Positions 1,697 to 54,365 of a stretch of DNA of 64,000 nucleotides are shown here, one piece after another. Origin of the DNA: Obrimoposthia wandeli (lineage: Eukaryota); the NCBI GenBank assembly GCA_977020255.1, contig CDROCS010003093.1:62001-126000 (forward strand). The letters run 5' to 3'. The translations under genes were made by a program, and so were the position numbers. How positions within the stretch are numbered: the first letter of the stretch is position 1; each line of letters starts with the position of its first letter. Under the pieces are notes generated by a model. It saw nothing but the letters and a program-made list of their open reading frames with translations, had not been told where the DNA came from and searched no databases.

Positions 1697-2602
1697 ATGG
1701 ATACTCGTTTTTTAGCAAGCTTAATCTGCGTCATAGAGACAGGATCTATAGCAGGTGCTGCTCGAGTACAAAATTTAACCGCAGCAGCGATCAGCCAAAG
1801 AATTAAATCTCTCGAAAACGCACTTCACTGTACCTTACTATCACGCACAGGTCATAGCGCTAAACCCACTGAAGCTTGCTTGAAAATTTTACCTAGACTA
1901 AGAAATATTAACGCTCAAATTGAGTTTATTGAGCACGATTTAGTGACGAGTGGTTTATCTGGTGAACTTAGATTAGGGGTTATTTCAACGCTTCTTAGTA
2001 GCGTTTTGCCGCGCTGCATTAAACACTTAAAAGATCAGGCCCCTAATATTTTACTGCAAGTTATTCCGGGATCGTCACAGCAGTTATATCAGCAATTAGT
2101 AGAGCAAAGAATTGATGTCGCTATTATCGTAAATCCGCGATTTAGCGTGCCTAAAGTATTAGACCAAAAACTGTTATTTTCTGAGCCTTTAACTTTAATA
2201 CAGCTCAATACTAAAATGAATATACAACAGGCACTTCATCACTTTCCTTATATTCAATACGATCACTTATCTTGGGGCGGAGCGCTCGCTAGTCGCTATT
2301 TAAAAGATCACCAATATCCAGTAAGCACTCTCTGTGAAATTGATGCATTAGAATCTATAGCACTGATGGTGCAACAGGGAATGGGCGTGTCTTTAGTGCC
2401 TGATTGGGAAAGTTTGAGTAGCATTGCACCGCTCTTACAAAAAAACATCATCGAAATACCCGCATATAATCGAAATATTGCATTATTAAGCCATAAGCAG
2501 TCGGGCAAGGAGAAAATTATCAAAGCATTTGATCAAGCCCTTAATTTAGCCCTTCCCAATCCAGATTCAAGTGTTGTTTGTGAGGATTTAGGCTGCGCCT
2601 AA
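1697..2602 (+). CDS. LysR-family transcriptional regulator
   Basis: N-terminal HTH (GSIAGAARVQNLTAAAISQRIKSLE) plus substrate-binding domain; divergent from the VOC/ghrA operon. Confidence 0.92.
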   Translation: MDTRFLASLICVIETGSIAGAARVQNLTAAAISQRIKSLENALHCTLLSRTGHSAKPTEACLKILPRLRNINAQIEFIEHDLVTSGLSGELRLGVISTLLSSVLPRCIKHLKDQAPNILLQVIPGSSQQLYQQLVEQRIDVAIIVNPRFSVPKVLDQKLLFSEPLTLIQLNTKMNIQQALHHFPYIQYDHLSWGGALASRYLKDHQYPVSTLCEIDALESIALMVQQGMGVSLVPDWESLSSIAPLLQKNIIEIPAYNRNIALLSHKQSGKEKIIKAFDQALNLALPNPDSSVVCEDLGCA

Positions 2603-2977
2603 TTCATCTCTAGCGTGAATCAAAGCCGTAAGTATCACACCAGATGATTTAGGCTGCGCCTAATTCATCTCTAGCATGAATCAAAACCGGAAGCATCACA
2701 CCAGATGATTTAGGCTGCGCCTAATTCATCTCTAACGTGAATCAAAACCGTAAGCATCACACCAGATGATTTAGGCTGCGCCTAATTCATCTCTAACGTG
2801 AATCAAAGCCGTAAGCATCACACCAGATGATTTAGGCTGCGCCTAATTCATCTCTAACGTGAATCAAAGCCGTAAGCATCACACCAGATGATTTAGGCTT
2901 CGCCTAATTCATCTCTAACGTGAATCAAAACCGTAAGCATCACACTAGATGATTTAGGCTGCGCCTAATTCATCTCT
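2582..2977. repeat. Tandem array A: 7 copies of a palindromic hairpin, 61-bp period
   Basis: Core (A)GATGATTTAGGCTGCGCCTAATTCATC(T) starts at 2582, 2643, 2704, 2765, 2826, 2887 and 2948. Linkers are near-identical (ctaacgtgaatcaaaRccgtaagcatcacacc). Confidence 0.97.
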
Positions 2978-3940
2978 ATTATGTGGTAATTCAAATCCTA
3001 GATCTGCGCCTACCGGTATTATCCCGGTGGGGTTAATCGTGCCATGAGATGCATAATAGTGCTCTTTTATATGTGCAATATCTACCGTCTCAGCAATACC
3101 CTTTACTTGGAATAACTCTCTAAGATAGTTAGATAGCGCGGGATAATCTGCAATGCGCTTTTTGTCACATTTAAAATGCCCAACATACACGGCATCAAAG
3201 CGTACCAGTGTGGTAAATAACCGCCAATCAGCTTCTGTTATTTGCCCTGCTACTAAATAGCGCTGTTGTGTTAAGCACGTTTCAAGCGAATCTAATACAC
3301 TAAATAACTGAGCTACAGCATCATCATAAGCGCATTGCGTTGTGGCGAAACCTGCTTTGTATACGCCATTGTTAATATTGTGGTAAACCTCTTCATTAAT
3401 CATGTCTATTTCACTGCGCAAACTCTCAGGATAATAATCACCAGCTACAGCACCTACGTTATCAAAAGCGCTGTTTAACATGCGAATAATATCAGCAGAT
3501 TCATTACTGACGATGGTATTGAGCTGTTTATCCCACAATATAGGGACCGTTACACGCCCCGAATAATCACTTTGAGCCTTCACATAAAGCTGATGCACGA
3601 AATCCGCTTGGTTTACATCATCTGCAATAACACCAGAGCCTGGATTAAAGCTCCAACCATCATCTTGCATCAAAGCATTTACCACAGATATCGATATCAT
3701 ATCCTCTAAACCTTTGAGCGCTCTAAATATCATAGTTCGGTGCGCCCAAGGACAAGCCAGAGAAATATATAAATGGTAACGTCCGCTCTGGGCTTTAAAC
3801 CCAGAATTACCTGTGGGCCCAGCACTACCCTCAGCAGTTATCCAATTGCGAAACTGGGATTGTTTGCGAACAAATTTGCCTTGTGTTGCCTTTGTATCAT
3901 ACCAATGCGTATGCCATTGGCCTTCAATTAATAAACCCAT
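2954..3940 (-). CDS. yqjG: Glutathionyl-hydroquinone reductase (GST omega/Xi class)
   Basis: RYHLYISLACPWAHR, GRVTVPILWD, NESADIIRM, NNGVYKAGFA and RFDAVYVGHFKC motifs. Confidence 0.93.
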   Translation of the reverse strand: MGLLIEGQWHTHWYDTKATQGKFVRKQSQFRNWITAEGSAGPTGNSGFKAQSGRYHLYISLACPWAHRTMIFRALKGLEDMISISVVNALMQDDGWSFNPGSGVIADDVNQADFVHQLYVKAQSDYSGRVTVPILWDKQLNTIVSNESADIIRMLNSAFDNVGAVAGDYYPESLRSEIDMINEEVYHNINNGVYKAGFATTQCAYDDAVAQLFSVLDSLETCLTQQRYLVAGQITEADWRLFTTLVRFDAVYVGHFKCDKKRIADYPALSNYLRELFQVKGIAETVDIAHIKEHYYASHGTINPTGIIPVGADLGFELPHNRDELGAA

Positions 3941-3962
3941 CTACACTCTCCTATACTTAAGT

Positions 3963-4805
3963 TTAATTAAACTTTCCCTGCTGATAATCTCGTACTGCTT
4001 GATTAATTTCAGCTTGGGTATTCATTACAAAAGGGCCGTAACGAGCCACACTTTCACCCAAAGGTTTCCCAGCGATTAACAAAAATCGACTGTTAACAAC
4101 TGAGCTAAGCTGTATTTCATCACCTGCACTAAAATGGGCTAACTGTTGTGCCCCAACAGTTGTATTCGATACAGTGAGTTCTCCTTCTAGCACGTAAATA
4201 AAGGCATTATAAGTGGGATCTATTACTTGTTTGAATGCTGATTTTTCCTGTAAATGTACATCCATATAAGTAGGGTCGGTATACTGGTTTTCCACCGGCC
4301 CTTGTGTACCTAGATCTGTAACACCGGCAATCACTTTAATGACTCCACCGTCTTCTCGCCGCTCTATTGCCACCTCATCAGCGGCGAACTCTTGATAAGC
4401 CGGCGCTGTCATTTTTGCACTACTCGGTAAGTTCACCCACAGTTGAAAGCCTTTTAATAAACCCTGTTCTTGCTCAGGCATTTCAGAGTGCAATATCCCT
4501 TTACCTGCTGTCATCCATTGCACCGCTCCTTCACCAATCACTCCCTCATTACCTTGGCTGTCTTTGTGGCGCATTTTGCCATTTAAAATATAGGTCACTG
4601 TTTCAAACCCTCGATGAGGGTGCTCAGGAAAACCTGCTATATAATCATTCGGGTCATCACTTTCAAAGCAATCAAGCAGTAAAAAAGGATCTAACATATC
4701 CAATTTAGGCTGCCCAATAATGCGCGTTAAATTTACCCCTGCTCCATCTCTGGTTGCTCTACCCGTAATAAGCTGTTGAACCTCACGAACTGTATTGGTG
4801 TGCAT
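3963..4805 (-). CDS. Pirin family protein
   Basis: DPFLLLD, FPEHPHRGFETVTY, VQWMTAGKGILHSEMP and GPFVMNT motifs. Likely start is ATG 4805 (MHTNTVRE) with GGGGAAG upstream; the track's extension to 4886 runs through a repeat element. Confidence 0.92.
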   Translation of the reverse strand: MHTNTVREVQQLITGRATRDGAGVNLTRIIGQPKLDMLDPFLLLDCFESDDPNDYIAGFPEHPHRGFETVTYILNGKMRHKDSQGNEGVIGEGAVQWMTAGKGILHSEMPEQEQGLLKGFQLWVNLPSSAKMTAPAYQEFAADEVAIERREDGGVIKVIAGVTDLGTQGPVENQYTDPTYMDVHLQEKSAFKQVIDPTYNAFIYVLEGELTVSNTTVGAQQLAHFSAGDEIQLSSVVNSRFLLIAGKPLGESVARYGPFVMNTQAEINQAVRDYQQGKFN

Positions 4806-4842
4806 AATGTCTTCCCCAAAGTATATTTTTAACCCTCTACTA

Positions 4843-4914
4843 TTAAAGATCCCAGGGGCAAGCCCTCTCGCTTCGCTCAACTTCATTTCGTGAAGCGGGG
4901 AATTTACCCTTGAT
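4843..4914. repeat. Repeat family C copy (REP-like) in the pirin/LysR divergent promoter region
   Basis: Its reverse complement matches 30737-30861, including an exact 19-bp ATCAAGGGTAAATTCCCCG. Its left end TTAAAGATCCCAGGGGCAAGCCCTC recurs at 61741. Internal hairpin CTTCA-tttcg-TGAAG. Confidence 0.8.
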
Positions 4915-5011
4915 TATCAATACAGTTTAATTGTTGATTACTAATTAACAAACAGCCACAATTAGAAATGATAATTGCTTAAATCAGAACAATAATGATT
5001 GGATGTATTGA

Positions 5012-5935
5012 ATGGGACAACTTGAAGATATGGCAATGTTTGTACGCATTGTCGACTCAGGAGGCATAGGTAAAGCAGCAGAGCAGCTTAACTTAGCTAA
5101 ATCTGCTGTGAGTCGGCGCTTAGTTTCGCTAGAAAAGCGTTTAAATACAAAATTACTGATTCGCACCACGCGCAAATCAAACCTCACTGATGCCGGCAGA
5201 AGCTACTATCAAAGGGCCATTAGTATTATTGATGACGTGGCTCAATTAAACACTAGCACCAGTAATACCAACACAGTCTTAGATGGGACGTTGCGCCTAG
5301 CTTTACCGCTTTCCTTCGGTTTGATGCATTTAAGCCCCTTATTGGACCTATTTAAACGTCAACATCCGCAACTGCGCTTAGATATCGATTTTTCGGATAG
5401 GCAAATAGATTTGGTAGAAGAGGGTTATGAGCTAGCCATTCGCATAGGCGAGCTTAAAGATTCTAGCATGCAAGCTAAAAAACTCGGGCCTGTACATCAC
5501 ACACTTTGCGCCAGCCCAAGCTATTTGGCAGAGCATGGTGAACCCTCTAGTATTGAAGAGCTTAAAACGCATAAGCTGTTACGTTACACCAATAACGAAA
5601 AACAAGGCTGGACGATCATTGATGGCGAGCAAAAAAAACATGTGCTAGATGTGACAGCACAGGTCTGTGCGAATAACGGAGGCTTTTTAGAAAAAATGGC
5701 GATAGCTGGGCACGGTATTGTCTACATACCTTGTTTTATCGTGTATCAATCAATAGCAGATAATTTATTAACCCCAGTATTACAAGATCATCGATTCATT
5801 GAATATAATATGTACGCTGTATACCCACAAAATCGCTTTTTATCACAGCGCGCTAGGCTATTCATTAACCTACTAACAGAACACTTTAGTCAAACTTCTG
5901 ATTGGAGTCTAAGTCGTTTGCATTCCGGTTCATAG
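5012..5935 (+). CDS. LysR-family regulator (DmlR/CrgA-like)
   Basis: HTH AAEQLNLAKSAVSRRLVSLEKRL, then GTLRLALPLSFG and DLVEEGYELAIRIG. Divergent from pirin, like the yhaJ/yhaK/yqjG neighbourhood of enterobacteria. Confidence 0.92.
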   Translation: MGQLEDMAMFVRIVDSGGIGKAAEQLNLAKSAVSRRLVSLEKRLNTKLLIRTTRKSNLTDAGRSYYQRAISIIDDVAQLNTSTSNTNTVLDGTLRLALPLSFGLMHLSPLLDLFKRQHPQLRLDIDFSDRQIDLVEEGYELAIRIGELKDSSMQAKKLGPVHHTLCASPSYLAEHGEPSSIEELKTHKLLRYTNNEKQGWTIIDGEQKKHVLDVTAQVCANNGGFLEKMAIAGHGIVYIPCFIVYQSIADNLLTPVLQDHRFIEYNMYAVYPQNRFLSQRARLFINLLTEHFSQTSDWSLSRLHSGS

Positions 5936-5958
5936 AACCTGTGTATAAAGCGCCCAAG

Positions 5959-6651
5959 TTACCATTGTTTTAAATAATACTCCGCTTTCCAGGTCAGTAC
6001 TTTAAACACGTCAAACAGACCCGTTTGTGATAAATAAAAGCTCAAATTGATCGCAAAGCTAAAAATTAACACTTGCCCTTGTTCAGTAAAAAACCAACTC
6101 AAAGCAGCCATATTGAGCAGTGCAACACTAAACAACACTACACTAAAACCAAACTTTTTAGTTTTGTGCCGCAACCATACTCTCGCGATAAAAGCGCCGG
6201 GCCAACCACAAAGTAAAGCGGTTAATTGCAACGTGAATTCGCTCACCCGCCACTCGCCTTTTCGCGCGGCTCTTTTATCTTTTGCATACAATATAAGCGT
6301 CAAGATGCTCATAAAGCTATACACAAGCGCCACGAGCATTGGCTGCATCAGTAAATAGACACAATAATAGATAGCGAATAAAAAAAGTAACCCACAAACC
6401 AAGGGCCATTTGGCCACAGGTCGCTTGGTTTTTTTGATAGCACCTTCTAAAATAGAAATAGATTTAGCGCGTGGCTTGCCTCTTTCCTCTTCACTAATAA
6501 TAAATTCAATACTTTGATGTAAGGCAAACGTATATCCAGCGCTTTGACACTCACTTTGATGGACAAATATTTGCACTCCACTTGCTTTAACCTGTGCGAA
6601 TCCATAGCCTTTTTGCTCATCCCAAGAAACTATTTTACCTTTGGTATACAT
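5959..6651 (-). CDS. Cold-shock domain + DUF1294 membrane protein
   Basis: N-terminal KGKIVSWDEQKGYGF...IFVH (CSD) and C-terminal LYAKDKRAARKGEWRVSE...CGWPGA...LRHKTKK (DUF1294). Confidence 0.88.
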   Translation of the reverse strand: MYTKGKIVSWDEQKGYGFAQVKASGVQIFVHQSECQSAGYTFALHQSIEFIISEEERGKPRAKSISILEGAIKKTKRPVAKWPLVCGLLFLFAIYYCVYLLMQPMLVALVYSFMSILTLILYAKDKRAARKGEWRVSEFTLQLTALLCGWPGAFIARVWLRHKTKKFGFSVVLFSVALLNMAALSWFFTEQGQVLIFSFAINLSFYLSQTGLFDVFKVLTWKAEYYLKQW

Positions 6652-6673
6652 CTATTACTTCACTACTTTAGAG

Positions 6674-7612
6674 TCAGTCATTTTTAGCTCTCGCCTTTAG
6701 CTCTTGAGGCAATAAACTGGCATATATCATTTCGTTGATTGGAGTCGCCACACCTACTTGTTTGGCTAATCTAATCACAGCTCCTGTTTGACTCTCTAAC
6801 TCTGAAGGCTTGCCGGATAACACATCGCGCTGCATAGACGTATCACTGTCCTCAGCAGAATTAAGTATCTGCTGCCATACCAAATCTTTGACGTTTTCAG
6901 GTAACACTACCTTGTGAGCAATGGCGACCGCTATTATCTCATCTATTGCACAACGTAATAACTGGCATGTTTGTTGATTGGCACGCACTTCCCCAAATTT
7001 AGCCCTGGTAACGCTACCGACACCGCTGGTACTGGCTATAAAAATAAATTTTCGCCATACTGCACTGTTTATATTATCTACCAGTTTAGTGTTAAAGCCA
7101 TCTGTGCGCTCTAGCTGCGCTAACACTTGTTGTGCTCTATTACTTAATTGGTTGTCTTGTTCACCAAATTGTAACCAAGGTTGTGAGCCAATATGATCAA
7201 TTTTACCTGGGCCAACCCTCTTTGCAAAAATTCCGCACAAGCCATTTAATACCTTAGTTGCACTGTATTGATTAGAGAGCACATTGACAGCATCGATACC
7301 ATTAAGCAGCGGCAGTATCAACGTGTTTTCACCCACTAAAGGCTGCATCGCTTGGGCTGCAGCCTCTACTTGCCAACCTTTAACGCAGACAATAACCAGA
7401 TCACAGACACCAATGTGTGCTGCATTATCACTTGCTTGGACAGGCTTTATTACAAAACTTCCGTTTATGCTATTTACTTGTAAACCTTGCGTTAACATCG
7501 CTTGCAAGTGCTCGCCTCTGGCAATAAAACTCACATCTAACCCAGCTTGCGCTAAGCGACCACCAAAATATGCACCCACTGCGCCTGCACCATATACTGC
7601 TATTTTCATCAA
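6674..7612 (-). CDS. panE: 2-dehydropantoate 2-reductase (ketopantoate reductase family)
   Basis: GAGAVG, LLNG, WRKF and TSMQRDVLSGKPSELE motifs. Confidence 0.88.
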   Translation of the reverse strand: MMKIAVYGAGAVGAYFGGRLAQAGLDVSFIARGEHLQAMLTQGLQVNSINGSFVIKPVQASDNAAHIGVCDLVIVCVKGWQVEAAAQAMQPLVGENTLILPLLNGIDAVNVLSNQYSATKVLNGLCGIFAKRVGPGKIDHIGSQPWLQFGEQDNQLSNRAQQVLAQLERTDGFNTKLVDNINSAVWRKFIFIASTSGVGSVTRAKFGEVRANQQTCQLLRCAIDEIIAVAIAHKVVLPENVKDLVWQQILNSAEDSDTSMQRDVLSGKPSELESQTGAVIRLAKQVGVATPINEMIYASLLPQELKARAKND

Positions 7613-7754
7613 CTTACCCGAAATATCCGATTATTAATTTACTATTGCGACCTATAAACAAACGCTAGTCGATTATTTGTATCAACCAATATTGGTCTTA
7701 TTTTGTCACACTGATCTACTTGCGTCACCTTGAAAAGCAGAGGATTATATAGCG

Positions 7755-7771
7755 AGTGCCCATCCAGAAAC
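7755..7771. repeat. Solo terminal-inverted-repeat remnant of MITE family B
   Basis: AGTGCCCATCCAGAAAC is the exact 17-nt reverse complement of the right end of the 52319-52481 element. Confidence 0.6.
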
Positions 7772-7802
7772 ACCAGCCAATATTAAGACAAGGATCTAAG
7801 CA

Positions 7803-8516
7803 TTGAATATTTACCACCGTATACTTTTAGTTGAAGATGATCACCAGCTGGCACAGCTTGTAAGTGATTACCTCACCAAAAACGGCTTTAGCGTGCACAC
7901 ACAAAGCAATGGGATCAGTGCCGTTGAGTATATAAAACAGCACAACCCAGAACTGGTTATCTTAGATATTATGCTGCCGGGCATCAATGGCATGGATGTG
8001 TGTCGCCAAGCTCGGGCTTTTTATCGCGGCCCTATCCTCATGTTGACGGCTTTAGATGAAGATATGGATCAAATGCTCGGGCTAGAAATTGGTGCCGATG
8101 ATTATGTTATTAAACCGGTAAAACCTAGGCTACTACTGACGCGCATACGCACGTTATTACGCAGAGTTAACCCTGATCTTAAACCAGATACTGCAGATAA
8201 AGAGCATACAAATACGTTAGCAATACAGCTTACTGATAGAACCGTTGTCTGTGAAAACCAATCCGTAAGTTTAACTACCGCCGAGTTTGACTTACTGGTG
8301 ATGCTTGCAAAAAATGCAGGTGAAATTGTTAATCGAGAGCAGATTGTTCAAGATCTACGCGGTTTTGAGTACGACGGTTTAGACAGATCCGTTGATAGGC
8401 GCATCTCTCGTTTACGTAGAAAACTACACGATGACAGCCAAGACCCTAAGCTAATCAAGACCATACGAGGCAAAGGCTATATGCTCTGCATCAACTACCC
8501 GTGTCTAGAAAATTAA
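7803..8516 (+). CDS. OmpR-family response regulator (RstA-like)
   Basis: Receiver domain (VEDD, LDIMLPG, GADDYVIKP) plus winged helix (DRSVDRRISRLRRKL, KTIRGKGY); TTG start. Confidence 0.92.
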   Translation: MNIYHRILLVEDDHQLAQLVSDYLTKNGFSVHTQSNGISAVEYIKQHNPELVILDIMLPGINGMDVCRQARAFYRGPILMLTALDEDMDQMLGLEIGADDYVIKPVKPRLLLTRIRTLLRRVNPDLKPDTADKEHTNTLAIQLTDRTVVCENQSVSLTTAEFDLLVMLAKNAGEIVNREQIVQDLRGFEYDGLDRSVDRRISRLRRKLHDDSQDPKLIKTIRGKGYMLCINYPCLEN

Positions 8517-8555
8517 CTATCTTACGACCTTAATACTCAGATCCAGCATTGCTGG

Positions 8556-10181: not shown

Positions 10182-10437
10182 CCAGCTTCATACTTGCTGT
10201 ACTTTCATTGCTCTGGTTTACAATAGTTGGATGAGGCTAAAATACTTAATATGAAAAGATGCTTGATAGATTTACAATCAATTATAGCTAAGCGTGTATT
10301 TGTTGAGGTAGAATATTTCTTATTAAGATGATTCAGTCGTATCCTAATCATCAAAGCCACTCCCCTAGCCTGCATTTTTCATAACATGTTAATATTTGCA
10401 CAAGGGGCCTTTATCCTACCATTGATGGCGATGCACT

Positions 10438-15787: not shown

Positions 15788-16156
15788 GTTTTAGAATCAT
15801 CTTTTAGCTTAAAAACATACGCTTGGTAATTTAGACTTTACCTCAATTATCTCTATACATACGAGAGACCGCTTTACCCGCATATAGCAACTATAATCTG
15901 TAAGCGAATCCACACGACTAACCGCCACGTATATTAAGATATATCCTATCCACTCTAAACCCTTGCGCTCTTGTTTTAATAATCAATGATGTGTAGCAAT
16001 TTTAGGTTTGCATCAATTTTGTTATGAAAATTTGAGCCTTTATTGGGTCTGATATTTACCAAGCCCATTAATTGCTAAGTAGTTAACTTTTTCCTGATCG
16101 TCACATTTTTTTACTGTAATATAATCTTTTTTATTAGGCTCTCTAGATTTAAATTT

Positions 16157-26227: not shown

Positions 26228-26288
26228 AGCAGGTATCTAATTGAATTTTTAGAGGTCAATTTATAAAATTGAAACTTAAAAAGCTAAT

Positions 26289-26349
26289 TAGTGTTCGTCC
26301 AGAAACGGGGCTGTTGCGAGGCTGTTCCAATGTGTCGAGATGGGCACTA
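26289..26349. mobile_element. MITE family B, 61-bp short form
   Basis: TAGTGTTCGTCCAGAAACGGGGCTGTTGCGAGGC...GAGATGGGCACTA is TA-bounded and matches the reverse complement of the right part of 52319-52481. Confidence 0.8.
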
Positions 26350-26412
26350 ATTACACATAGTAATCACTTTAATCAACTACAATCGCACTATAAGGTTTTG
26401 CTATAACCTTTA

Positions 26413-27691: not shown

Positions 27692-27752
27692 AGGTGAACC
27701 TGCGAATTAAAATTTCTCATTTATTAACCTAATTGGTTTGCTTGGATTTAAC

Positions 27753-27813
27753 TAGTGTTCGTTTGGAAACCGGGCCTTTGCGAGGCAGGCTCAATGGTTC
27801 GAGATGGGCGCTA
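27753..27813. mobile_element. MITE family B, 61-bp short form (direct repeat of 26289-26349)
   Basis: TAGTGTTCGTTTGGAAACCGGGCCTTTGCGAGGC...GAGATGGGCGCTA; about 48/61 identical to 26289-26349 by manual alignment. Confidence 0.78.
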
Positions 27814-28297
27814 ATTATAAGTGCGCATCAAAACTAAAACTCACTACGATAACATCATGCTATTTGCATAAAACCGCCGGCCAAACCCTGTTGTTTATTG
27901 GAGATTCACTTAGTGGAGCGGGCTATTTAATAGAGATGACGACACCGCAATCTCATAGCAAAAGCGCGCAATAATATTATCCTGCTAACACAGTTGCAAG
28001 ATATTAAAAAACCTTTTGCAATCCAACTATGAATATCCGAGTTTTTATACGGATCTGCGCGTTTACTGTTAATTATTCTTCGCGCTAAGCTACTGGAGAC
28101 TTACGCTTGAAAACTTACACTACATCTACTGTTTATCTATTGATGATCACTATTTATATCAACTGTTTATCCACAGTTCGCACTCTTTTTATCCCCGCTA
28201 ATTTAGTTATAAATCAAAGCTTCCTATATTAGGGGTTGGTTAATAATACAGAGTGCGTTACTCTTCTCTGCTCATTTTATAACCGTTTATTACTAAC

Positions 28298-30646: not shown

Positions 30647-30712
30647 ATTTTTCCTAACTCATTTTTAATGAACATGTACTAAACCTATAATATTGACATA
30701 CAATTTAATTGA

Positions 30713-30861
30713 GATGAATGAGGCGTAGCCTAAATCATCAAGGGTAAATTCCCCGTATCTGAAGGCGTAAACTTATTAGTATAAAAAGCCACTAGAATAC
30801 CCCCTTTCACGAGGTGAAGTCGAGCGAAGCAAAGTGAGAGCGCTTGCCCTGGTGATCTTTA
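30713..30861. repeat. Composite repeat: inverted solo array hairpin fused to a family C element
   Basis: GATGAATGAGGCGTAGCCTAAATCATC (30713-30739) is the reverse complement of the array core (TAC-loop form) with 1 mismatch. It overlaps a family C copy that carries an insert of about 48 bp relative to 4843-4914. Confidence 0.8.
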
Positions 30862-39980: not shown

Positions 39981-39983
39981 ACA

Positions 39984-42382: not shown

Positions 42383-42620
42383 GTACTACTTTACGAGGGA
42401 TGGATTAGCTAAAGTCTAATTCATCAATGAGTTTTCTATCGGGATATTTATTTGCAAAAATAAGTAAAACTTAATACGCATTTATCCAATAAGGTACTAT
42501 TTTTTAATGGCAGTCTATGTAAAACTCCATGACTGTATAAATAATAAAAATTAATAGCTGGCTGTTTATTCAAGGTTAATCATAACAGCCACTACATTAT
42601 GTAAAATTTGGAGATTACTA

Positions 42621-44898: not shown

Positions 44899-45041
44899 CG
44901 CAGCTTAAAACGTTTGAATAAAGCAGTTAGAAAACAAGGAATTTTAGAGTGAATAACAATTTATAATCGACAGTGAGATATGCGAAGCTTTCTAAAAGGA
45001 GACATATTCAGAAAGTTGAGACTGGATGTTCTTTAGTAAAA

Positions 45042-45076
45042 CAGCCTCTAAATTCATAATTTAAATCTAGAGGCTG
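45042..45076. terminator. Inverted repeat between convergent DMT and fba genes
   Basis: CAGCCTCTA (45042-45050) and TAGAGGCTG (45068-45076). Confidence 0.5.
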
Positions 45077-45087
45077 GAACGGTTAGG

Positions 45088-46137: not shown

Positions 46138-46352
46138 ATCTCTTCACCTGTCATTTTGGTTCTTTGTTTTGCTGTTATATTAACCAGCATCGATTTTGAT
46201 GCGGCATTCTACCAGAGCTAGCCCTCAAGTTCTAAAATTTTAGAGATATCTTGTGAATAAAACCGTTCTAAGGCAGCTTTATTATTTTTATCAATTTTAA
46301 AGATACTCATCTATTTCATATGATTTAAGGCAATCCTACAAACTAGCTACCT

Positions 46353-47738: not shown

Positions 47739-47743
47739 TGAGC

Positions 47744-49960
47744 TTAGCCTTTTTGCAGTAAGACAGAAAATTGTGCGCCGCTGGTGTGAGGCTCTTGCTG
47801 TTGTGAGTAGTTTTGAGCAGATAACTCCCCACCTAAATCTTCAATAATGCGTTGAGAAATAGACAGACCTAGCCCTAACCCCTGCCCTTCTGTTTTGGTT
47901 GTAAAGAAAGGCTCAAAAACCTTTGATAAATGCGCCTCACTGATACCTAAACCATTGTCCCTTACCCGTATTTTAATTAACCCAGTGCCTTGTAGTAATT
48001 GGTCAATAATCACACTGGGTTGCTCGAGTATATTTGAGTTATGCTCGGCAGCATGCATAGCGTTTGCTATAAGATTGACCATAACTTGCTCTAAGCGTAG
48101 TAAATCACCGCAAACTAATAAATCAACTTCAGGCTCATGCCAAGTAACGCAAACTTTTGATTTTTCTAACTTAGGATACAAAATAGCTAACACACCACTG
48201 CGCAGAGCCATGACAGAAACTGATTGTTGTAAGCCACTGCTTTTTCTTGAAAACTCTTTTAGGGGGTGCAATATTTTTGCCATGCGCTCCGTCAATAATG
48301 ATATTTCAGCAAAGTTCTGATCAACTCTGTCTTCTTTTTGTAGTGCTAGGTATTTTCGACCATTATCTGCATAGCCTCTAATTGCCATTAAAGGCTGATT
48401 CAACTCATGATTTATCCCCGTCGACATCTGGCCTATAACGGCAAGTTTAGCAGCTTGTACTAGCTCGTTTTGGGTTTGGCTGTGCTGCTCTATTTCTTCG
48501 GTTAATCGCTCATTCGCTTGGGTGAGCTCAATAGTGCGCTTTTCGACTCGACTCTCCAATAACCGCTTAGATTGATCTAGTTGTGCTTCGTATTGTTTTC
48601 GCTCAGTAATATCTTGTACTGTAATCAAAAAATGCAGGGCGCCTTGTTGATGCATTTTGCCCACCACAAATTCTATCGGTAGCTTATTATCATTACGACA
48701 TAGAAATCGCCCCTCTATTAATACTTCTGATGTATTAAAGCGTTGCTCATCTATTTGTTGTAAGTACAGTTTTTCATCAACATCTTGCAATAAAGGATAA
48801 AAAGGCATCCCCTGCAAATCATCTTGAGTATACATAAACATTTCTTGGGCAGTCACGTTCATTGATTCAATACAGCCTGTCGTATCTAACGTAATAAGCC
48901 CTGCTCTGGTGTTATTAATAATGGCCTTAACTCGGGCCTCACTATTTTCTAAAGACTGTAACTCTCTGAGCTCAAACAAGGATTTCTGTTTTGCGATTCT
49001 GCGTCTTGCCCAAATCACCATTCCCAGTAATACCAGTGCCACATAGACGGTACCAACATACAGCATGTTAGCAAGGACTTGTCGCTGCACTGTTTCTAAG
49101 TTAGCTAGTATGGATACGTTTAAATCGCTATTACCCACCACACTTTGTTGTATCAAATACCTGTGCTCTTTTTTGGCGAATTTAGGCTCTAATACCGTAA
49201 TGATCTGGCTATTTTGCTGGCTCAACTGCCGTTTAGTGATGTTCAGTGCGACCAGCTTTTGGCCTATATAACGTTTACTTGCAGCTATTCTCTCTAAATC
49301 TTTCTTTTGTAATGATTTAAGCGTTCTAAACTTCCAATCATCACGCGTCGATATAAAAATCACCCCATCTTCATCACTCACGATTAATTCTATATCTTGC
49401 TCACTCCAATCTTGCTCTATCTCGTTTAAGTCGATTTTAACCACAATCACACCAATAATCACACCTCGATGGCGCACTGGATACGAGTAATAAAAACCTC
49501 TTTTTTTAGAGGTGGTACCTAGTGCAAAGTATTGTCCTAACTCTCCACCCATTGCCTTAATAAAATACGGCCTGAAGTTAAAATTGCGACCTATAAAAGT
49601 GGTGGGGCTTTGCCAACTGCTTGCTGCAACGGTGACACCGTCACTATTCATTAAATAGGTATCACGCGTACCTAACACATTATTCACTTGCTCTAAACGC
49701 AGATTGGCACGAATAAAGTCATTAGAGTTTGCTTGGCTACGCAATGCACGCACTAAATCAGGGTGAGTGGAGAGTAATTGCGGGATATCCCTAAAACGAG
49801 CCAATTTTTGGCGCATCGTTAAGATATAGCGGTTTAAATCCGCATGGGTGCGCTGCTGCAATTTTGCAATGGCATTTTGCTGTGAATATTCAGAGATTAA
49901 GCTGAGCACTAATACCAAGCCTAGCAATAATATGACGCTAATAAATGAGCGCTTGAACAC
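47744..49960 (-). CDS. dctB: DctB-like sensor kinase (Cache, PAS, HisKA, HATPase)
   Basis: FIGRNFNFRPYF, LGTTSKKRGFYYSYPV, GINHELNQPL and GLGLGLSIS motifs. Confidence 0.85.
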   Translation of the reverse strand: MFKRSFISVILLLGLVLVLSLISEYSQQNAIAKLQQRTHADLNRYILTMRQKLARFRDIPQLLSTHPDLVRALRSQANSNDFIRANLRLEQVNNVLGTRDTYLMNSDGVTVAASSWQSPTTFIGRNFNFRPYFIKAMGGELGQYFALGTTSKKRGFYYSYPVRHRGVIIGVIVVKIDLNEIEQDWSEQDIELIVSDEDGVIFISTRDDWKFRTLKSLQKKDLERIAASKRYIGQKLVALNITKRQLSQQNSQIITVLEPKFAKKEHRYLIQQSVVGNSDLNVSILANLETVQRQVLANMLYVGTVYVALVLLGMVIWARRRIAKQKSLFELRELQSLENSEARVKAIINNTRAGLITLDTTGCIESMNVTAQEMFMYTQDDLQGMPFYPLLQDVDEKLYLQQIDEQRFNTSEVLIEGRFLCRNDNKLPIEFVVGKMHQQGALHFLITVQDITERKQYEAQLDQSKRLLESRVEKRTIELTQANERLTEEIEQHSQTQNELVQAAKLAVIGQMSTGINHELNQPLMAIRGYADNGRKYLALQKEDRVDQNFAEISLLTERMAKILHPLKEFSRKSSGLQQSVSVMALRSGVLAILYPKLEKSKVCVTWHEPEVDLLVCGDLLRLEQVMVNLIANAMHAAEHNSNILEQPSVIIDQLLQGTGLIKIRVRDNGLGISEAHLSKVFEPFFTTKTEGQGLGLGLSISQRIIEDLGGELSAQNYSQQQEPHTSGAQFSVLLQKG

Positions 49961-50163
49961 AATAAGGGTACTCGCTTAATTGTTGGATTTAAAAAATTTA
50001 AAAAACACTTCATTTTGAAGCGGCTAAAATAAGCTACTATTCAACGCAAAGTATTAGAACAATACTGGCATGCTTAGTTATACTAGCGATTTTGAGCACC
50101 TATAGTAACGTATTTTTAAGCAGCAGTGCTCAACGTTAACCTCACAAGGTAAAAATTACTGCT

Positions 50164-52311
50164 ATGATTATCGCTAATCAAATTGCCAAAGAACTCCAAA
50201 TAACCAAGCAACAAGTAGCAGCAACTATTACTCTACTAGATCAAGGCGATACCGTCCCTTTTATTGCACGTTATCGTAAAGAGGCGACTGACGCGCTAGA
50301 TGATATCCAGCTGCGAACACTTGCCCAAAGGCTAGATTATTTAAGGCAGCTAGAACTGCGCAAAAAAAGCATCTTATTAAGCATAGACCAGCAAGGCTTG
50401 TTAACGGAGCAATTAAAAGCAGCCGTCATAAATAGCCTAAACAAAATTGAAATAGAAGATTTATACCTACCATTTAAGCCAAAAAGAAATTCAAAAGCGA
50501 GCACTGCTAAAAACGCCGGGCTACAACTGCTCGCCGATCAACTGTTGAGTGAAGAAAGCCTCAATCCGCACTTTATCGCCAAGTCTTTCATCAATCCACA
50601 ACGCGGTATCGATAGCATTGAACAAGCACTCGATGGTGCAGAGCATATCATTTTAGAACACTTAGCTGAAAACGCCTCTTTAGTTGGTCAACTTAGACAG
50701 TGGCTTACGCGCAATGCCATAGTGACAGTGAAAGTAAAAAGAGGGAAACACGATCCACAAAGCAAGTTTCGAGATTACTTTGATTTCAAGCAGGCATTAC
50801 CGCAGATACCTTCTCACCGGTCTCTGGCAATTTTTCGTGGTATCAAAGAAGGCCTTTTAAAGTTAACTATTGATGCGCCAGAACACGCTACATCACAACC
50901 AACAACTATGATTGAGCGCCAACTTATTAACATAGGGCTCAGGCGTACCCAAGACTATTTTCTTAAAGAACTCGCTAAACGAGCTTGGCTTTTAAAGCTG
51001 CAACCTCAGCTCGAAAGTGATTTGAGCAAAGTGTTAAAGGACAATGCCGACCAAGACTCTATTCAAGTATTTGCTACTAATTTAAAAGACTTGTTAATGG
51101 CAGCCCCAGCTGGCGAAAAAGTCACTATGGGCTTAGACCCAGGGTTAAGAAGCGGGGTTAAAGTTGCCGTTGTTAGCTCTACAGGAAGCTTATTAGATCA
51201 AGCGGTTATATATCCTCATGCCCCTCAGAACAAGTGGGATGATGCCTTATCTAAATTAAAATTTTTAGTCGATAAACATCGTATTTCACTGGTGAGTATT
51301 GGTAACGGGACCGCCTCACGAGAAACTGAATTACTGGCAAAAGAGCTGCAAGAAAATTGCCAACAAGCCTTTACATCAGTAGTTACTAGTGAGGCAGGCG
51401 CGTCTGTATACTCCGCCTCTGAGTTAGCAAGTAATGAATTTCCCGATGTTGATGTCAGCATTCGCGGTGCGATTTCAATCGCTAGGCGTTTACAAGACCC
51501 ATTAGCAGAACTCGTAAAAATCGATCCTAAAGCAATTGGTGTTGGCCAGTATCAGCATGATGTTAATCAAAAGGCGCTTAATTTAAAATTATCTGCAGTA
51601 GTTGAAGATTGCGTGAACAGTATCGGGGTTAATCTAAACAGCGCCTCTGTGCCACTACTCACACAAGTTGCAGGCATTAACCAAACTATTGCCGAAAATA
51701 TAGTTAAGACACGAGAAGAAAAAGGTGAATTCAAAAGCCGTAACGAGCTGTTGAAAGTCCCAAGACTCGGCGCTAAATCCTTTCAACAATGTGCAGGATT
51801 TTTACGATTAAGTCACTCTAAACAGCCTTTAGATAACAGTGCGGTGCACCCAGAAAGCTACCCACTTGTTGTTAAAATGGCAGCACAAGCTAATGTTACC
51901 TGTGATCAGTTAATTGGTAATACCTTGCTTTTATCGCAACTAAATACCGAGCTATTGTGCGATGAAAAATTTGGGCGCTACACGGTCAATGACACAATTG
52001 TTGAGCTTGGAAAACCTGGACGAGACCCAAGACCTGAGTTTAAAACGGTAACATTTGATGACACTGTAAATTCAGTGAAAGATTTACAGCCACAGATGAA
52101 ATTAGCAGGGGTTATTACCAATGTTACAAACTTTGGTGCATTTGTCGATATCGGCGTTCACCAAGATGGCTTAGTCCATATATCCCAACTTAGCGATCAC
52201 TTTGTAAAAGATCCACATCAAGTCGTTAAAACAGGGCAAATAGTCAATGTTTCGGTGATGGAAATAGACATTGCACGTCAACGAATTTCGTTAAGTATGA
52301 AGTCACAATAA
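50164..52311 (+). CDS. tex: Tex RNA-binding transcriptional accessory protein
   Basis: TVPFIARYRKE, GLDPGLRSG, IGNGTASRET, SEAGASVYSAS and C-terminal S1 domain. Confidence 0.95.
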   Translation: MIIANQIAKELQITKQQVAATITLLDQGDTVPFIARYRKEATDALDDIQLRTLAQRLDYLRQLELRKKSILLSIDQQGLLTEQLKAAVINSLNKIEIEDLYLPFKPKRNSKASTAKNAGLQLLADQLLSEESLNPHFIAKSFINPQRGIDSIEQALDGAEHIILEHLAENASLVGQLRQWLTRNAIVTVKVKRGKHDPQSKFRDYFDFKQALPQIPSHRSLAIFRGIKEGLLKLTIDAPEHATSQPTTMIERQLINIGLRRTQDYFLKELAKRAWLLKLQPQLESDLSKVLKDNADQDSIQVFATNLKDLLMAAPAGEKVTMGLDPGLRSGVKVAVVSSTGSLLDQAVIYPHAPQNKWDDALSKLKFLVDKHRISLVSIGNGTASRETELLAKELQENCQQAFTSVVTSEAGASVYSASELASNEFPDVDVSIRGAISIARRLQDPLAELVKIDPKAIGVGQYQHDVNQKALNLKLSAVVEDCVNSIGVNLNSASVPLLTQVAGINQTIAENIVKTREEKGEFKSRNELLKVPRLGAKSFQQCAGFLRLSHSKQPLDNSAVHPESYPLVVKMAAQANVTCDQLIGNTLLLSQLNTELLCDEKFGRYTVNDTIVELGKPGRDPRPEFKTVTFDDTVNSVKDLQPQMKLAGVITNVTNFGAFVDIGVHQDGLVHISQLSDHFVKDPHQVVKTGQIVNVSVMEIDIARQRISLSMKSQ

Positions 52312-52318
52312 GACTAAC

Positions 52319-52481
52319 TAGTGCTCATCCAGAAACAGTTGCCTACTGCGGCTGTCCCACTGGATTGATCTGATCGTTACTAGATGTAGTTGTTTGGAAT
52401 AACCAAACGCCCACATCTAGTAACACCCATCTCGACCCATTGGATCAGCCTCGCAACGGCCCCGTTTCTGGATGGGCACTA
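52319..52481. mobile_element. MITE family B, full 163-bp form
   Basis: TA-GTGCTCATCCAGAAAC ... GTTTCTGGATGGGCAC-TA terminal IRs, with a central hairpin GTTACTAGATGT/ACATCTAGTAAC (52376-52424). Confidence 0.85.
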
Positions 52482-52559
52482 ACTAATGACTTAGCTAATC
52501 TCATTATTGAAATGTTGCGCCTAGCAGACGTTTAACGTTTAACGTACGCGGTTAAATCA

Positions 52560-53669
52560 TTAATCTTGTAATGAGAATTGATAATCGCTCAGTGCACCGT
52601 TCACTTGAGACTCACTGCTTAGTTTTATCATCAAGCGTAAATCGTTTGCGGAATCAGCGTGAGATAGCGCAGAGTCATAACTAATTTCGCCTTGTAAATA
52701 CAATTGATACAATGATTGATCGAACGTTTGCATCCCTAGGTTGTTAGATTTTTTCATCACATCTTTAATTTCACTAAAGCGCCCTTTACTGATCAGCTCC
52801 CCGACTAACGGGGTATTGGTCAGTATTTCGGTTGCAACTCTGCGCCCATCGCCATTTTTGGCAGGTATTAACTGTTGCGCCACTATCGCTTTTAAATTAA
52901 CCGATAGTTCTAAGCGTAACTTCTCGTGGTACTCTGCTGGGAACATATTAATGATACGGTTTAACGCTTGATCTGCATTGTTTGCATGTAGCGTAGCAAG
53001 ACACAGTTGTCCCGTTTCGGCGAAGGTTAAACCAAAGCGCATGACTTCTAGGTTTCTAATCTCACCCATCAGAATCACATCGGGGGATTGTCTTAAACTA
53101 TTATGCAGAGCGTTCTCGAATGACTCAGTGTCTATGTTAACTTCACGTTGAGTAATAATACTTCTCTTATGCTCGTGAATGTACTCAATAGGGTCTTCAA
53201 TGGTAATGATATGACCTGCACTGTTTGCGTTTCGATGATCGATGAGCGATGCAAGCGATGTCGTTTTACCTGTTCCTGTCGCACCGACAAACAAAATAAG
53301 CCCGCGCTTAGATAATGCTAAATCTTTTAGTACATGCGGCAATTGTAATTCTTGCATACTAGGTATTTCGGTGTGAATACGCCGAACTACCATAGCAGGA
53401 GTTCCTCTTTGATAGTAAGCGCTCACTCTGTATCTGCCAGTTTCAGTTCCAATTGCGAAGTTACACTCTTGTGTTTCCACATACTCGGCCTTTTGCCGTG
53501 CATTCATAGAGCTAAATACCAACGCGCTTATTTCATCTATGCTTAAGATATCATCTGTCAGCGGAATTAACTGCCCACTCACTCTAATACTCGCTTTAGC
53601 ACCCACCACTAAAAACAAGTCTGATGCTTTTCTACGTATAATTTCTTCTAATAACTGAGAGAGATCCAC
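52560..53669 (-). CDS. pilU: Type IV pilus retraction ATPase PilU
   Basis: GATGTGKT, TIEDPIE, LRQSPDVILMGE and ATLHANNA motifs; GTG start. Confidence 0.93.
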   Translation of the reverse strand: MDLSQLLEEIIRRKASDLFLVVGAKASIRVSGQLIPLTDDILSIDEISALVFSSMNARQKAEYVETQECNFAIGTETGRYRVSAYYQRGTPAMVVRRIHTEIPSMQELQLPHVLKDLALSKRGLILFVGATGTGKTTSLASLIDHRNANSAGHIITIEDPIEYIHEHKRSIITQREVNIDTESFENALHNSLRQSPDVILMGEIRNLEVMRFGLTFAETGQLCLATLHANNADQALNRIINMFPAEYHEKLRLELSVNLKAIVAQQLIPAKNGDGRRVATEILTNTPLVGELISKGRFSEIKDVMKKSNNLGMQTFDQSLYQLYLQGEISYDSALSHADSANDLRLMIKLSSESQVNGALSDYQFSLQD

Positions 53670-53903
53670 AAACTACCCTTAATTTAATGAAACAACCTTA
53701 ATTTATCATTTTATGAATTAAGGTTTTATTAAATGTATCCTACAGCACCTTTTCATAAGTAATCCAATAGAATCGGACTAATTATGAAAGGGTACGTATA
53801 AATCGAATAGTATTGCAGACGATAAAGAAGCTTTGATACAGCTATTATTACACCTGTATCAAAGATTTTTTGTATAACTTAAAGCTCTAAGGGGGTGGCT
53901 CTT

Positions 53904-54365
53904 GGATGATTTAGGCTACGCCTAATTCATCCTTAATGGGCACGAAATTCTACAGGGATTCTTTTGGATGATTTAGGCTGCGCCTAATTCATCCTTAATG
54001 GGCACGAAATTCTACAGGGATTCTTTTGGATGATTTAGGCTACGCCTATTTCATCCTTAATGGGCTCGAAATTCTGCAGGGATTCTTTTGGATGATTTAG
54101 GCTACGACTAATTCATCCTTAATGGGCTCGAAATTCTGCAGGGATTCTTTTGGATGATTTAGGCTACGCCTATTTCATCCTTAATGGGCTCGATATTCTG
54201 CAGGGATTCTTTTGGATGATTTAGGCTACGACTAATTCATCCCTATGGGCTCAAAATTCTGCTGGGATTCTTTTGGATGATTTAGGCTGCGCCTAATTCA
54301 TCCTTAATGGGCTCGAAATTCTGCAGGGATTCTTTTGGATGATTTAGGCTGCGCCTAATTCATCC
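53904..54365. repeat. Tandem array B: 8 copies of the same hairpin as array A, 62-bp period
   Basis: GGATGATTTAGGCTRCGCCTAATTCATCC at 53904, 53966, 54028, 54090, 54152, 54214, 54275 and 54337. The linker ttaatgggctcgaaattctgcagggattcttt is unrelated to the array A linker. Confidence 0.97.

What the first reader, a model, noticed from the sequence alone, without database searches (positions are those of the whole stretch)
2582..54365. Two distant tandem arrays share one hairpin repeat but carry different, locus-specific linkers
Seen: array A (2582-2977, 7 copies, 61 bp) and array B (53904-54365, 8 copies, 62 bp) use the same core GATGATTTAGGCTRCGCCTAATTCATC. Their 32-33-bp linkers are unrelated between arrays but nearly identical within each. 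The closing base pair co-varies (A...T in array A, G...C in array B), so the stem is preserved. Solo copies lie at 30713 (inverted) and 62911 (degenerate). On the minus strand the terminal copies read ATAG-(A/G)GATG-hairpin. Established: REPs mobilised by HUH/Y1 RAYT (TnpA-REP) enzymes are hairpins with a 5' GTAG-like foot. Inference: a REP-like hairpin picks up about 32 bp of local DNA and amplifies hairpin plus flank as a unit, giving CRISPR-like geometry without spacer diversity. No cognate enzyme is present in this window.
Basis: partly seen in the sequence, partly recalled or inferred. Interest (0 to 1): 0.7.

Follow-up and report, generated by a model that had tools for sequence, protein, structure and literature searches.

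The report
Tandem arrays of a REP-like hairpin
Two gene-end stretches of a marine bacterium are local pile-ups of one short DNA hairpin plus a spacer; the hairpin belongs to a small, so far undescribed family of scattered repeats, so this is a new example of a known kind of bacterial repeat, not a new system.

Summary
Array A (2582-2974, 7 hairpins, 61 bp) and array B (53905-54364, 8 hairpins, 61/62 bp) share one 27-nt hairpin. Their 34-35-nt linkers are 94-96% alike within an array and occur nowhere else in the 1.35-Gb mixed assembly.

The hairpin is not a free-standing element. It is the conserved 3' end of a mosaic, REP/BIME-like intergenic repeat. Solo copies have 15 conserved nt before it and 9 after it, and many extend to about 115 or 165 nt with further small variable hairpins. 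The family has about 154 copies in this assembly. It was found in only 3 of 151 sampled species of the Nitrincolaceae/Oceanospirillaceae-type family.

The arrays behave as minisatellites:
- Array B contains a duplicated two-unit block.
- A 41-bp array at one metagenome locus has 10 versus at least 18 copies in different samples.
- A 100-bp array is a single copy in a 94-97% identical relative.
- The pilT-pilU spacer of relatives has no hairpin.

No RAYT, TnpB, DUF559 or cas gene is linked to the hairpin. Where the A and B linker cores came from is unresolved. The first 6-8 nt of every linker are the family's own tail.

The scan met this family before on another contig (s1-217578). Verdict: new member of a known kind, modest interest.

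The parts
2582..2974 (+). Array A: 7 copies of the 27-nt hairpin with 6 linkers of 34 nt (period 61). It fills the whole gap between two convergent genes.
   Evidence: the linker core is unique in the assembly
1697..2602 (+). LysR-family regulator gene. Its stop codon TAA (2600-2602) lies in the 3' arm of the first hairpin of array A.
2954..3940 (-). GST-like gene. Its last six codons and its stop (2954-2956) are encoded by the last hairpin of array A. Orthologues (56-65% identical) end differently.
53873..54372 (+). Array B: a pre-hairpin module (53873-53904), 8 hairpins (53905-54364) with 7 linkers of 35/34 nt, and the tail CCTATTAA (54365-54372) that abuts the pilT stop codon.
   Evidence: the linker core is unique in the assembly
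54373..55407 (-). pilT. Its stop TGA (54373-54375) directly abuts the array's tail.
52560..53669 (-). pilU-type ATPase gene downstream of array B on the minus strand. Array B lies in the pilT-pilU spacer.
30704..30861 (-). Solo full long-form element of about 160 nt. It has four small hairpin modules, with the 27-nt hairpin at 30713-30739.
   Evidence: 138 bits
62871..62947 (+). Degenerate solo: proximal module, decayed hairpin and tail CCTATTAAA.
4844..4915 (+). Hairpin-less copy. It has the 5' modules and the pre-hairpin motif, and ends at ..ACCCTTGAT without the 27-mer.
   Evidence: 51 bits
61742..61770 (+). Isolated 5' module (first small hairpin) of the family.
10323..10357 (-). Decayed solo hairpin with recognisable pre-hairpin motif and tail.
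15818..15856 (+). Decayed solo hairpin followed by TCTATA (weak match).
42394..42429 (-). Decayed or variant hairpin (weak match).

Best explanation
The 27-nt hairpin is the conserved 3'-terminal module of a mosaic, REP/BIME-like intergenic repeat family. The family is restricted to a narrow clade of marine Nitrincolaceae-type gammaproteobacteria.

Arrays A and B are minisatellite-like local amplifications of one hairpin plus one 34-35-nt spacer. Once two hairpin copies lie in direct orientation about 60 bp apart, replication slippage or unequal recombination between the identical 27-nt copies adds and removes whole units. Such recombination between close, short direct repeats is established as RecA-independent. 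This keeps the units of one array alike and leaves each locus with its own spacer. No new spacers are acquired.

The hairpin carries stop codons in all six frames and sits at gene 3' ends. It often lies exactly 4 nt past a convergent gene's stop, and in array A both neighbouring genes terminate inside it. It therefore tolerates, and probably targets, TAATAG-like sequences at gene ends.

In RNA it is expected to act as other REPs do, as a 3' stabiliser and partial non-intrinsic terminator. Array B would then lower pilU expression relative to pilT.

Shown here: family structure, copy distribution, array polymorphism, lineage-specific presence, and lack of a linked enzyme. Inferred: the slippage mechanism, the target preference and the RNA-level effect.
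For: Family and anatomy:
- There are 154 hits in the assembly against 0 for the reversed control.
- The same 27-mer occurs in three Oceanospirillaceae/Nitrincolaceae MAGs, and in only 3 of 151 sampled species of that family.
- 96 solo copies share GGGAATTWWACCCTT before the hairpin and TCTATTAAA after it.
- Long forms of about 115 and 165 nt contain further small hairpins that are about 80% paired, with some compensatory changes.
- Modules also occur without the hairpin, so the family is a mosaic.
- All 78 adjacent hairpin pairs are in direct orientation and none is inverted.

Array dynamics:
- In array B, hairpins 3-6 alternate between A21T and C17A together with their linkers. This marks a duplicated 124-bp double unit.
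- Terminal units are the most divergent.
- A 41-bp array with identical flanks has 10 copies in one metagenome contig and at least 18 in another. The two carry different mixes of a T-A or G-C stem pair and its recombinants.
- The 100-bp array is 5 copies here and 1 copy in a relative whose flanks are 94-97% identical.
- The pilT-pilU spacer is 703 bp here. In relative G003 it is 308 bp and has no hairpin.

Gene ends:
- All 83 clusters are intergenic or at gene ends. In 12 of them the convergent gene's stop lies exactly 4 nt from the hairpin.
- TGA, TAG and TAA close all three frames on both strands of the hairpin.
- The GST-like gene's orthologue has ..AACAGAGAT at the position where the window has ..AATAGAGAT followed by the hairpin.

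Precedent:
- Tandem REP/REPIN clusters 'including the flanking sequences' are described in Pseudomonas (PMC3116915).
- The REP325 cluster in the yjdM-yjdN spacer acts as a partial terminator and mRNA stabiliser (bioRxiv 10.64898/2026.03.23.713779).
Against: - Slippage was not observed directly. The only run that holds the locus is probably the source sample, and its short contigs break at the array.
- Nine arrays of the window's organism (eight fetched, plus an unfetched 52-bp array on C4052) cluster at periods of 52-62 bp. Simple slippage from random starting doublets does not predict this.
- The origin of the first hairpin-spacer-hairpin doublet, and of the A and B linker cores, is unresolved.
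- The near-invariant T.T mismatch (178 of 186 copies) and the conserved flanks suggest sequence-specific recognition by a protein that was not found.
- There are no expression data.
Confidence: 0.7

Rival explanations
1. A RAYT-type (HUH/Y1) or other strand-specific enzyme mobilises the hairpin, picks up about 32 bp of adjacent DNA and reinserts hairpin plus flank repeatedly, which builds the arrays.
For: - An ATAG(A/G) foot lies 5' of the hairpin on the minus strand. The T.T mismatch is invariant and the orientation of tandem copies is fixed.
- A native site resembles the tail at the array A junction.
- Pure 41-bp and 35-36-bp head-to-tail arrays contain no extra DNA.
- The array periods cluster at 52-62 bp.
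- One unexamined lead remains: inverted copies bracket about 950 bp on contig C4455.
Against: - 35 Y1-transposase matches exist in the assembly. None lies on the window's contig, and the intact ones examined are flanked by other inverted repeats. Only a decayed one lies 320 bp from a copy.
- In relatives with 62, 28 and 7 copies, the Y1 genes are likewise unlinked.
- No TnpB was found and no DUF559 in the richest genome.
- There are no inverted doublets of REPIN type.
- The two-unit duplication inside array B fits recombination, not one-by-one insertion.
Confidence: 0.12
2. The arrays are selected devices rather than near-neutral minisatellites. They would be phased binding sites for a DNA- or RNA-binding protein, or a graded RNA barrier that sets the pilT:pilU ratio. 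Selection would hold the period of about 61-62 bp (about six helical turns).
For: - The array periods cluster at 52-62 bp.
- The hairpin is far better conserved than the modules around it.
- Compensatory stem changes occur.
- Array B sits inside an operon-like gene pair with no predicted promoter or intrinsic terminator nearby.
- REP clusters have such effects in E. coli.
Against: - 4 of the 8 hairpins in array B carry stem-breaking changes.
- Copy number varies freely between samples and relatives.
- Relatives manage without any hairpin in the same spacer.
- Linker cores share no motif: between-array similarity has z = 1.8.
- Hairpin conservation is partly an effect of searching with the hairpin itself.
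Confidence: 0.12
3. A degenerate or orphan CRISPR array.
For: The repeat is 27 nt and palindromic, and the 'spacers' are 34-35 nt.
Against: - Spacers are identical within an array.
- The same repeat occurs about 100 times as solo copies with conserved flanks.
- The flanking genes encode LysR, GST-like, pirin, PilT and PilU proteins and YggS- and ProC-like proteins. None is a cas gene.
Confidence: 0.01
4. An assembly artefact, that is, collapsed or inflated repeats.
For: Short-read contigs of the one holding run break at the array.
Against: - Units differ by ordered point changes.
- Both array edges join in frame to conserved genes.
- Comparable arrays occur in independent MAG and metagenome assemblies.
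Confidence: 0.02

Closest known systems
REP / REPIN / BIME elements of Enterobacteria and Pseudomonas, including tandem REPIN clusters that repeat the flanking sequence (Bertels & Rainey 2011, PMC3116915; Nunvar 2010, PMC2817692)
   Same: - A short imperfect palindrome, with tens to hundreds of extragenic copies.
- Lineage-specific sequence, and a conserved short foot beside the stem.
- Mosaic association with other small motifs.
- Tandem clusters in which hairpin and adjacent sequence repeat as one unit.
- Location between convergent genes and inside operons.
   Different: - The foot is ATAG(A), not GT[AG]G.
- Copies are solo or in direct tandem, never in the inverted doublets that define REPINs and BIME-1/2.
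- The element is A+T-rich with built-in stop codons.
- No RAYT is flanked by it.
SMAG elements of Stenotrophomonas maltophilia (Rocco 2010, as reviewed in PMC3184786)
   Same: A small stem-loop with a tetranucleotide foot. It occurs as monomers and multimers downstream of genes, and its copy number affects upstream mRNA stability.
   Different: SMAGs are G+C-rich, have a GTAG foot and are tied to RAYT-type transposases. No long mosaic form is described for them.
BOX elements of Streptococcus pneumoniae (modular boxA-boxB(n)-boxC)
   Same: A modular, MITE-like intergenic element in which one internal module varies in tandem copy number.
   Different: The sequence and host are unrelated. BOX has defined terminal modules on both sides of the amplified module. 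Here the amplified module is the terminal hairpin.
CRISPR arrays
   Same: Only the geometry: a 27-nt palindromic repeat alternating with a spacer of about 34 nt.
   Different: The spacers are identical, there are no cas genes, there is no leader, and the repeat is dispersed as solo copies.
E. coli REP325 cluster in the yjdM-yjdN spacer (bioRxiv 10.64898/2026.03.23.713779)
   Same: Several hairpin units sit between two co-oriented genes, as array B does between pilT and pilU. It is the best functional analogy: partial Rho-dependent termination plus stabilisation of the upstream mRNA.
   Different: The function is shown there and only inferred here. The units there alternate in orientation.

Membership tests
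REP/RAYT (REPIN) system | Short imperfect palindrome in high copy number, extragenic | tested here: met
   An 11-bp stem with a T.T mismatch. There are 154 hits in the assembly and 62 in relative G001. All 83 clusters are intergenic or at gene ends.
REP/RAYT (REPIN) system | Conserved GT[AG]G tetranucleotide at the 5' foot | tested here: not met
   The foot on the minus strand is ATAG(A/G). The plus-strand tail TCTAT is present in 80-95% of 96 solo copies. This is similar in kind but not the defining motif.
REP/RAYT (REPIN) system | A cognate RAYT (Y1 transposase) gene flanked by the same REPs | tested here: not met
   PF01797 matches in the assembly and in three relatives are not next to the hairpin, and they carry other flanking inverted repeats. 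The genomes are incomplete, so absence is not proven.
REP/RAYT (REPIN) system | Inverted REP doublets as the replicating unit | tested here: not met
   0 of 78 neighbouring pairs within 300 nt are inverted.
BIME (bacterial interspersed mosaic element) | REPs combined with other conserved motifs in mosaic arrangements | tested here: met
   Modules a, b, c and the hairpin occur in several combinations and also separately.
BIME (bacterial interspersed mosaic element) | Regularly spaced REPs in alternating orientation | tested here: not met
   All tandem copies are direct.
MITE | Terminal inverted repeats and a target-site duplication | tested here: inconclusive
   There is only a 9-nt imperfect match between the two ends (AATARAGAT). 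One empty site against an occupied site shows the whole long form present or absent, but the flanks are too diverged to read a duplication.
CRISPR | Unique spacers between repeats, plus cas genes | tested here: not met
   Spacers within an array are 94-96% identical. Neighbouring genes are housekeeping genes.
Intrinsic terminator | G+C-rich hairpin followed by a T run | tested here: not met
   No terminator-like site is found in or beside either array.
IS200/IS605-derived element (PATE, TnpB-associated) | TnpA/TnpB genes in the genome with ends that carry the same hairpin | tested here: not met
   There is no PF07282 match in three relatives, and the Y1 genes are unlinked.
Known RNA family (Rfam) | Match at or above the gathering score | tested here: not met
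   The long-form solo gives only chance-level matches of about 17 bits, E of 4 and 9.

The most novel reading that the evidence does not exclude
The hairpin, with its invariant T.T mismatch, fixed orientation and ATAG foot, is the substrate of a strand-specific inserting enzyme that is not yet identified and is not a RAYT. That enzyme would target TAATAG-type stop-codon clusters at gene ends. The pure head-to-tail arrays (35, 36 and 41 bp) and the clustering of other arrays near 60 bp would then be footprints of repeated insertion at a target that each insertion regenerates, with slippage acting only afterwards.
Probability: 0.12. Interest if true: 0.65.

Novelty: new member of a known kind. 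Interest (0 to 1): 0.3.

Why it matters
It adds an apparently undescribed, clade-restricted repeat family to the REP/BIME class; the papers searched hold no relevant use of its sequence. It shows that such hairpins can form large direct-repeat minisatellites that vary between natural marine populations.

Two features deserve a specialist's glance:
- The hairpin is a six-frame stop cassette that neighbouring genes actually use as their stop.
- It lacks any linked RAYT.

In practice, the arrays are ready-made markers of variable unit number for strain typing in this clade. Array B offers a natural test of how many hairpins it takes to uncouple two genes of an operon.

Tried and rejected
- RAYT link. 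PF01797 was searched in the assembly and in relatives G001-G003, and the loci were scanned for the hairpin and for inverted repeats. No association was found. Only a decayed copy on C1143 lies 320 bp from a hairpin.
- DUF559 endonuclease, a lead from note s1-200840. It is absent from G001, which has 62 hairpins.
- TnpB (PF07282). It is absent from all three relatives.
- Inverted copies that bracket a gene on C5945. The gene encodes a flavin reductase, so it is not a mobility gene.
- Rfam. Nothing was found.
- Viral contigs. No exact copy was found.
- Linker = the element's own upstream module. A profile test gave z = 0.8 for A and 0.9 for B, both not significant. It gave 2.6-4.6 for five other roughly 60-bp arrays and 7-15 for the 72-100-bp arrays.
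- Linker = a copy of the local flank. This is not significant for A, including against the orthologue's native 3' end, and borderline for B.
- My by-eye alignments suggested both of these linker origins. The shuffle tests did not bear them out.
- Reads. One holding run exists, with contigs only, and they break at the array. This gave no RNA information and no unit count.
- attC-like reading of TTAGGC...GCCTAA. The order of the two half-sites is the reverse of that in an integron attC site (sequence inspection plus my own knowledge).
- The 'Colwellia' occurrence. That contig is 99.4% identical to a contig of the DT_75 MAG, so it is probably mis-binned.


Full report
**What the window is.**
The window is dense with bacterial genes and has about 41% G+C. 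It is part of contig C3093 in a 1.35-Gb mixed assembly that holds an animal genome and many bacteria. PilT is 92-96% identical in protein to that of three Oceanospirillaceae/Nitrincolaceae MAGs. The host is therefore a marine gammaproteobacterium of that group.

- Tandem Repeats Finder reports 2585-2978 (period 61, 96% matches) and 53902-54365 (period 62, 94%).
- The 27-mer GATGATTTAGGCTRCGCCTAATTCATC, with up to 3 mismatches, hits 7 times in array A, 8 times in array B and once inverted at 30713. Shuffles give none.
- It folds into an 11-bp stem with one T.T mismatch and a 3-nt loop.
- The linkers are 34 nt in A and 35 nt in B.
- Their cores occur nowhere else in the assembly at up to 3 mismatches in 28.

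**The hairpin is the end of a larger element.**
- Extracting every copy with flanks shows conserved sequence outside the 27-mer. In 96 solo copies the 15 nt before it read GGGAATTWWACCCTT and the 9 nt after it read TCTATTAAA.
- Many copies continue upstream to about 115 or 165 nt through two or three further small hairpins. The sequences of these vary, but they stay about 80% paired, with some compensatory changes (alignment A1).
- The window's solo copy is such a long form (30704-30861, minus strand).
- The upstream modules also occur without the hairpin. Examples are window 4844-4915 and 61742-61770. Relative G001 has 28 copies of the 5' module against 62 hairpins.
- This mosaic make-up is what the term BIME was coined for.
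- Rfam does not know the element. The papers searched hold no relevant use of the sequence.

**Distribution.**
- The assembly holds 154 hits, against 0 for the reversed control. They come from at least two related bacteria.
- One bacterium mostly has A or G in the loop. The window belongs to it.
- The other has C in the loop. Its contigs are 89-97% identical to MAG G003.
- Of 151 sampled species of the family, only G001, G002 and G003 carry the hairpin, with 62, 7 and 28 copies.
- A 'Colwellia' hit is a contig 99.4% identical to a G001 contig and is probably mis-binned.
- No viral contig has the hairpin.

**Gene context.**
- All 83 clusters lie between genes or at gene ends.
- On the tail side, a convergent gene's stop lies exactly 4 nt from the hairpin in 12 loci. 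That stop is the TTA of TCTATTAAA, read as TAA. Fourteen stops fall in that frame (12 at that TAA, 2 at the adjacent TAG) against four in the other two frames.
- The hairpin alone carries TGA, TAG and TAA, one per frame, on each strand.
- In array A both convergent genes end inside the terminal hairpins. The LysR gene stops at 2600-2602. The GST-like gene stops at 2954-2956 and ends ...HNRDELGAA.
- The GST-like orthologue in G003 ends ...HNRDHCCPV. Its DNA reads ..CATAACAGAGAT, then CATTGC. The window reads ..CATAATAGAGAT, then the hairpin.
- So the tail-like motif was already in the native gene. I take this, together with the frame bias, as a sign that the hairpin lands beside TAATAG-like sequences. 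That rests on one junction and is an inference.
- Array B starts 8 nt after the pilT stop and fills most of the 703-bp pilT-pilU spacer. In G003 the same spacer is 308 bp and has no hairpin. In the Colwellia-labelled MAG G004 it is 75 bp.
- No sigma-70-like promoter or intrinsic terminator is predicted in or beside either array.

**How the arrays behave.**
- Fifteen tandem clusters were seen, with periods of 35, 36, 41, 52, 55, 59, 59, 60, 61, 62, 62, 72, 89, 94 and 100 bp.
- All 78 neighbouring pairs are direct repeats.
- Inside array B, hairpins 3-6 alternate between two different stem-breaking changes. The linkers follow the same two-unit pattern. So a 124-bp block was duplicated.
- At one metagenome locus a pure 41-bp array (six pre-hairpin bases, the hairpin, the 8-nt tail) has 10 copies in one contig and at least 18 in another. 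The flanks are identical. The mixes of a T-A pair, its compensatory G-C form and the two recombinant mismatched forms differ.
- The 100-bp array on contig C2422 has five units here and one in G003, with flanks 94-97% identical.
- These are the marks of slippage or unequal exchange between close direct repeats. They are not the marks of ordered acquisition.

**What the linkers are.**
- Across the eight arrays with 28-35-nt linkers, the first 7 nt are alike (z = 3.1). They are the family's own tail. The cores are barely more alike than shuffles (z = 1.8).
- A profile of the solo upstream module scores the linkers of the 72-100-bp arrays far above shuffles (z = 7-15). Five of the roughly 60-bp arrays score moderately (z = 2.6-4.6). 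A, B and one other do not (z below 1).
- The 100-bp unit clearly contains copies of both flanks. This agrees with scan note s1-217578.
- For A, no flank gives a significant match, and neither does the orthologue's native 3' end. For B, 17 of 25 collinear positions match the last bases of pilT, p about 0.05-0.12.
- My estimate for A and B: a decayed copy of the family's own variable module, about 45%; local DNA caught between two hairpin copies or within a first duplication, about 40%; something else, about 15%.

**Stem evolution.**
- Among 186 distinct copies (51 sequence types) I count 44 one-sided breaks, 14 wobble changes and 8 compensatory types at four different pairs. The T.T mismatch is kept in 178 of 186 copies.
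- Compensation is more than chance would give, so the stem matters. Most variation, however, is decay.
- The set was collected with the hairpin as probe, so its conservation is partly built in. Decayed copies do exist in the window.

**The search for an enzyme.**
- Y1-transposase (RAYT-like) genes exist in the assembly and in the relatives. None is on the window's contig. The intact ones carry other flanking inverted repeats. Only a pseudogene on C1143 is near a copy.
- DUF559 and TnpB are absent from the copy-rich relatives.
- A gene bracketed by inverted copies on C5945 encodes a flavin reductase.
- A second such bracket, on C4455, could not be read.
- Genes around both arrays are housekeeping genes.

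**Reads.**
One public run holds the locus. It is probably the source sample, and its short contigs end at the array. It gives neither unit counts nor expression.

**Unexplained.**
- Nine arrays of the window's organism cluster at 52-62 bp.
- The T.T mismatch is nearly invariant.
- At the orthologous locus of the 100-bp array, two close relatives carry different upstream modules.

**Verdict.**
This is a real, well-formed feature of a known kind: REP/BIME-like hairpin repeats with minisatellite-type tandem amplification. Precedents are the tandem REPIN clusters that include flanking sequence (PMC3116915) and the REP325 cluster. The family itself appears undescribed. The scan has already met it on another contig.

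Noticed in passing
window 52313-52487: A 174-bp intergenic repeat right after the Tex-like gene, with roughly 23-nt inverted ends (TAACTAGTGCTCATCCAGAAACA ... TGTTTCTGGATGGGCACTAACTA). Short 69-nt relatives lie at 26285-26353 and 27749-27817, and an end fragment at 7750-7772. Copies 75-97% identical lie on other contigs and in a MAG. It is probably a separate MITE family.
   Followed up: partly
window 1458-1629: Another interspersed repeat of about 170 bp, between a glyoxalase-like gene and the LysR gene. It is 97% identical to a copy on contig C6364 and 85-90% identical to copies in MAG loci. It contains a long internal inverted repeat.
   Followed up: no
L008:1553-1720 versus L076:2261-2760: At one orthologous locus (flanks 94-97% identical), one relative has a single long-form copy. 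The other has five 100-bp units with a different small hairpin upstream of the 27-mer. The upstream module can therefore be replaced quickly.
   Followed up: partly
L093:1380-2217 and L095:1413-2320 (relative G001, contig C66): Two Y1-transposase-like genes, each flanked by its own 25-26-nt inverted repeats (for example ATCAATGGGGTCAGAGTAAATTGAT). This looks like a separate REP/RAYT-type system in the same genome.
   Followed up: partly
L005 versus L013: The only 'Colwellia' MAG contig with the hairpin (JALJPA010000328.1) is 99.4% identical over 3.5 kb to a contig of the Nitrincolaceae MAG DT_75. This is probably a binning error in the public record.
   Followed up: partly
assembly contig C4455:20463-21634 (not in the window): One plus-strand and two minus-strand hairpin copies bracket about 950 bp, tail to tail. 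This is the only inverted bracket left unexamined, because no more sequence could be fetched.
   Followed up: no
assembly contig C4052:67263-67445 (not in the window): Four hairpin copies with a T6G change at a 52-bp period. This is another array of the 52-62-bp class. It was not fetched.
   Followed up: no
window 53905-54364: 4 of the 8 hairpins of array B carry a stem-breaking change in an alternating pattern (A21T, C17A, A21T, C17A).
   Followed up: yes
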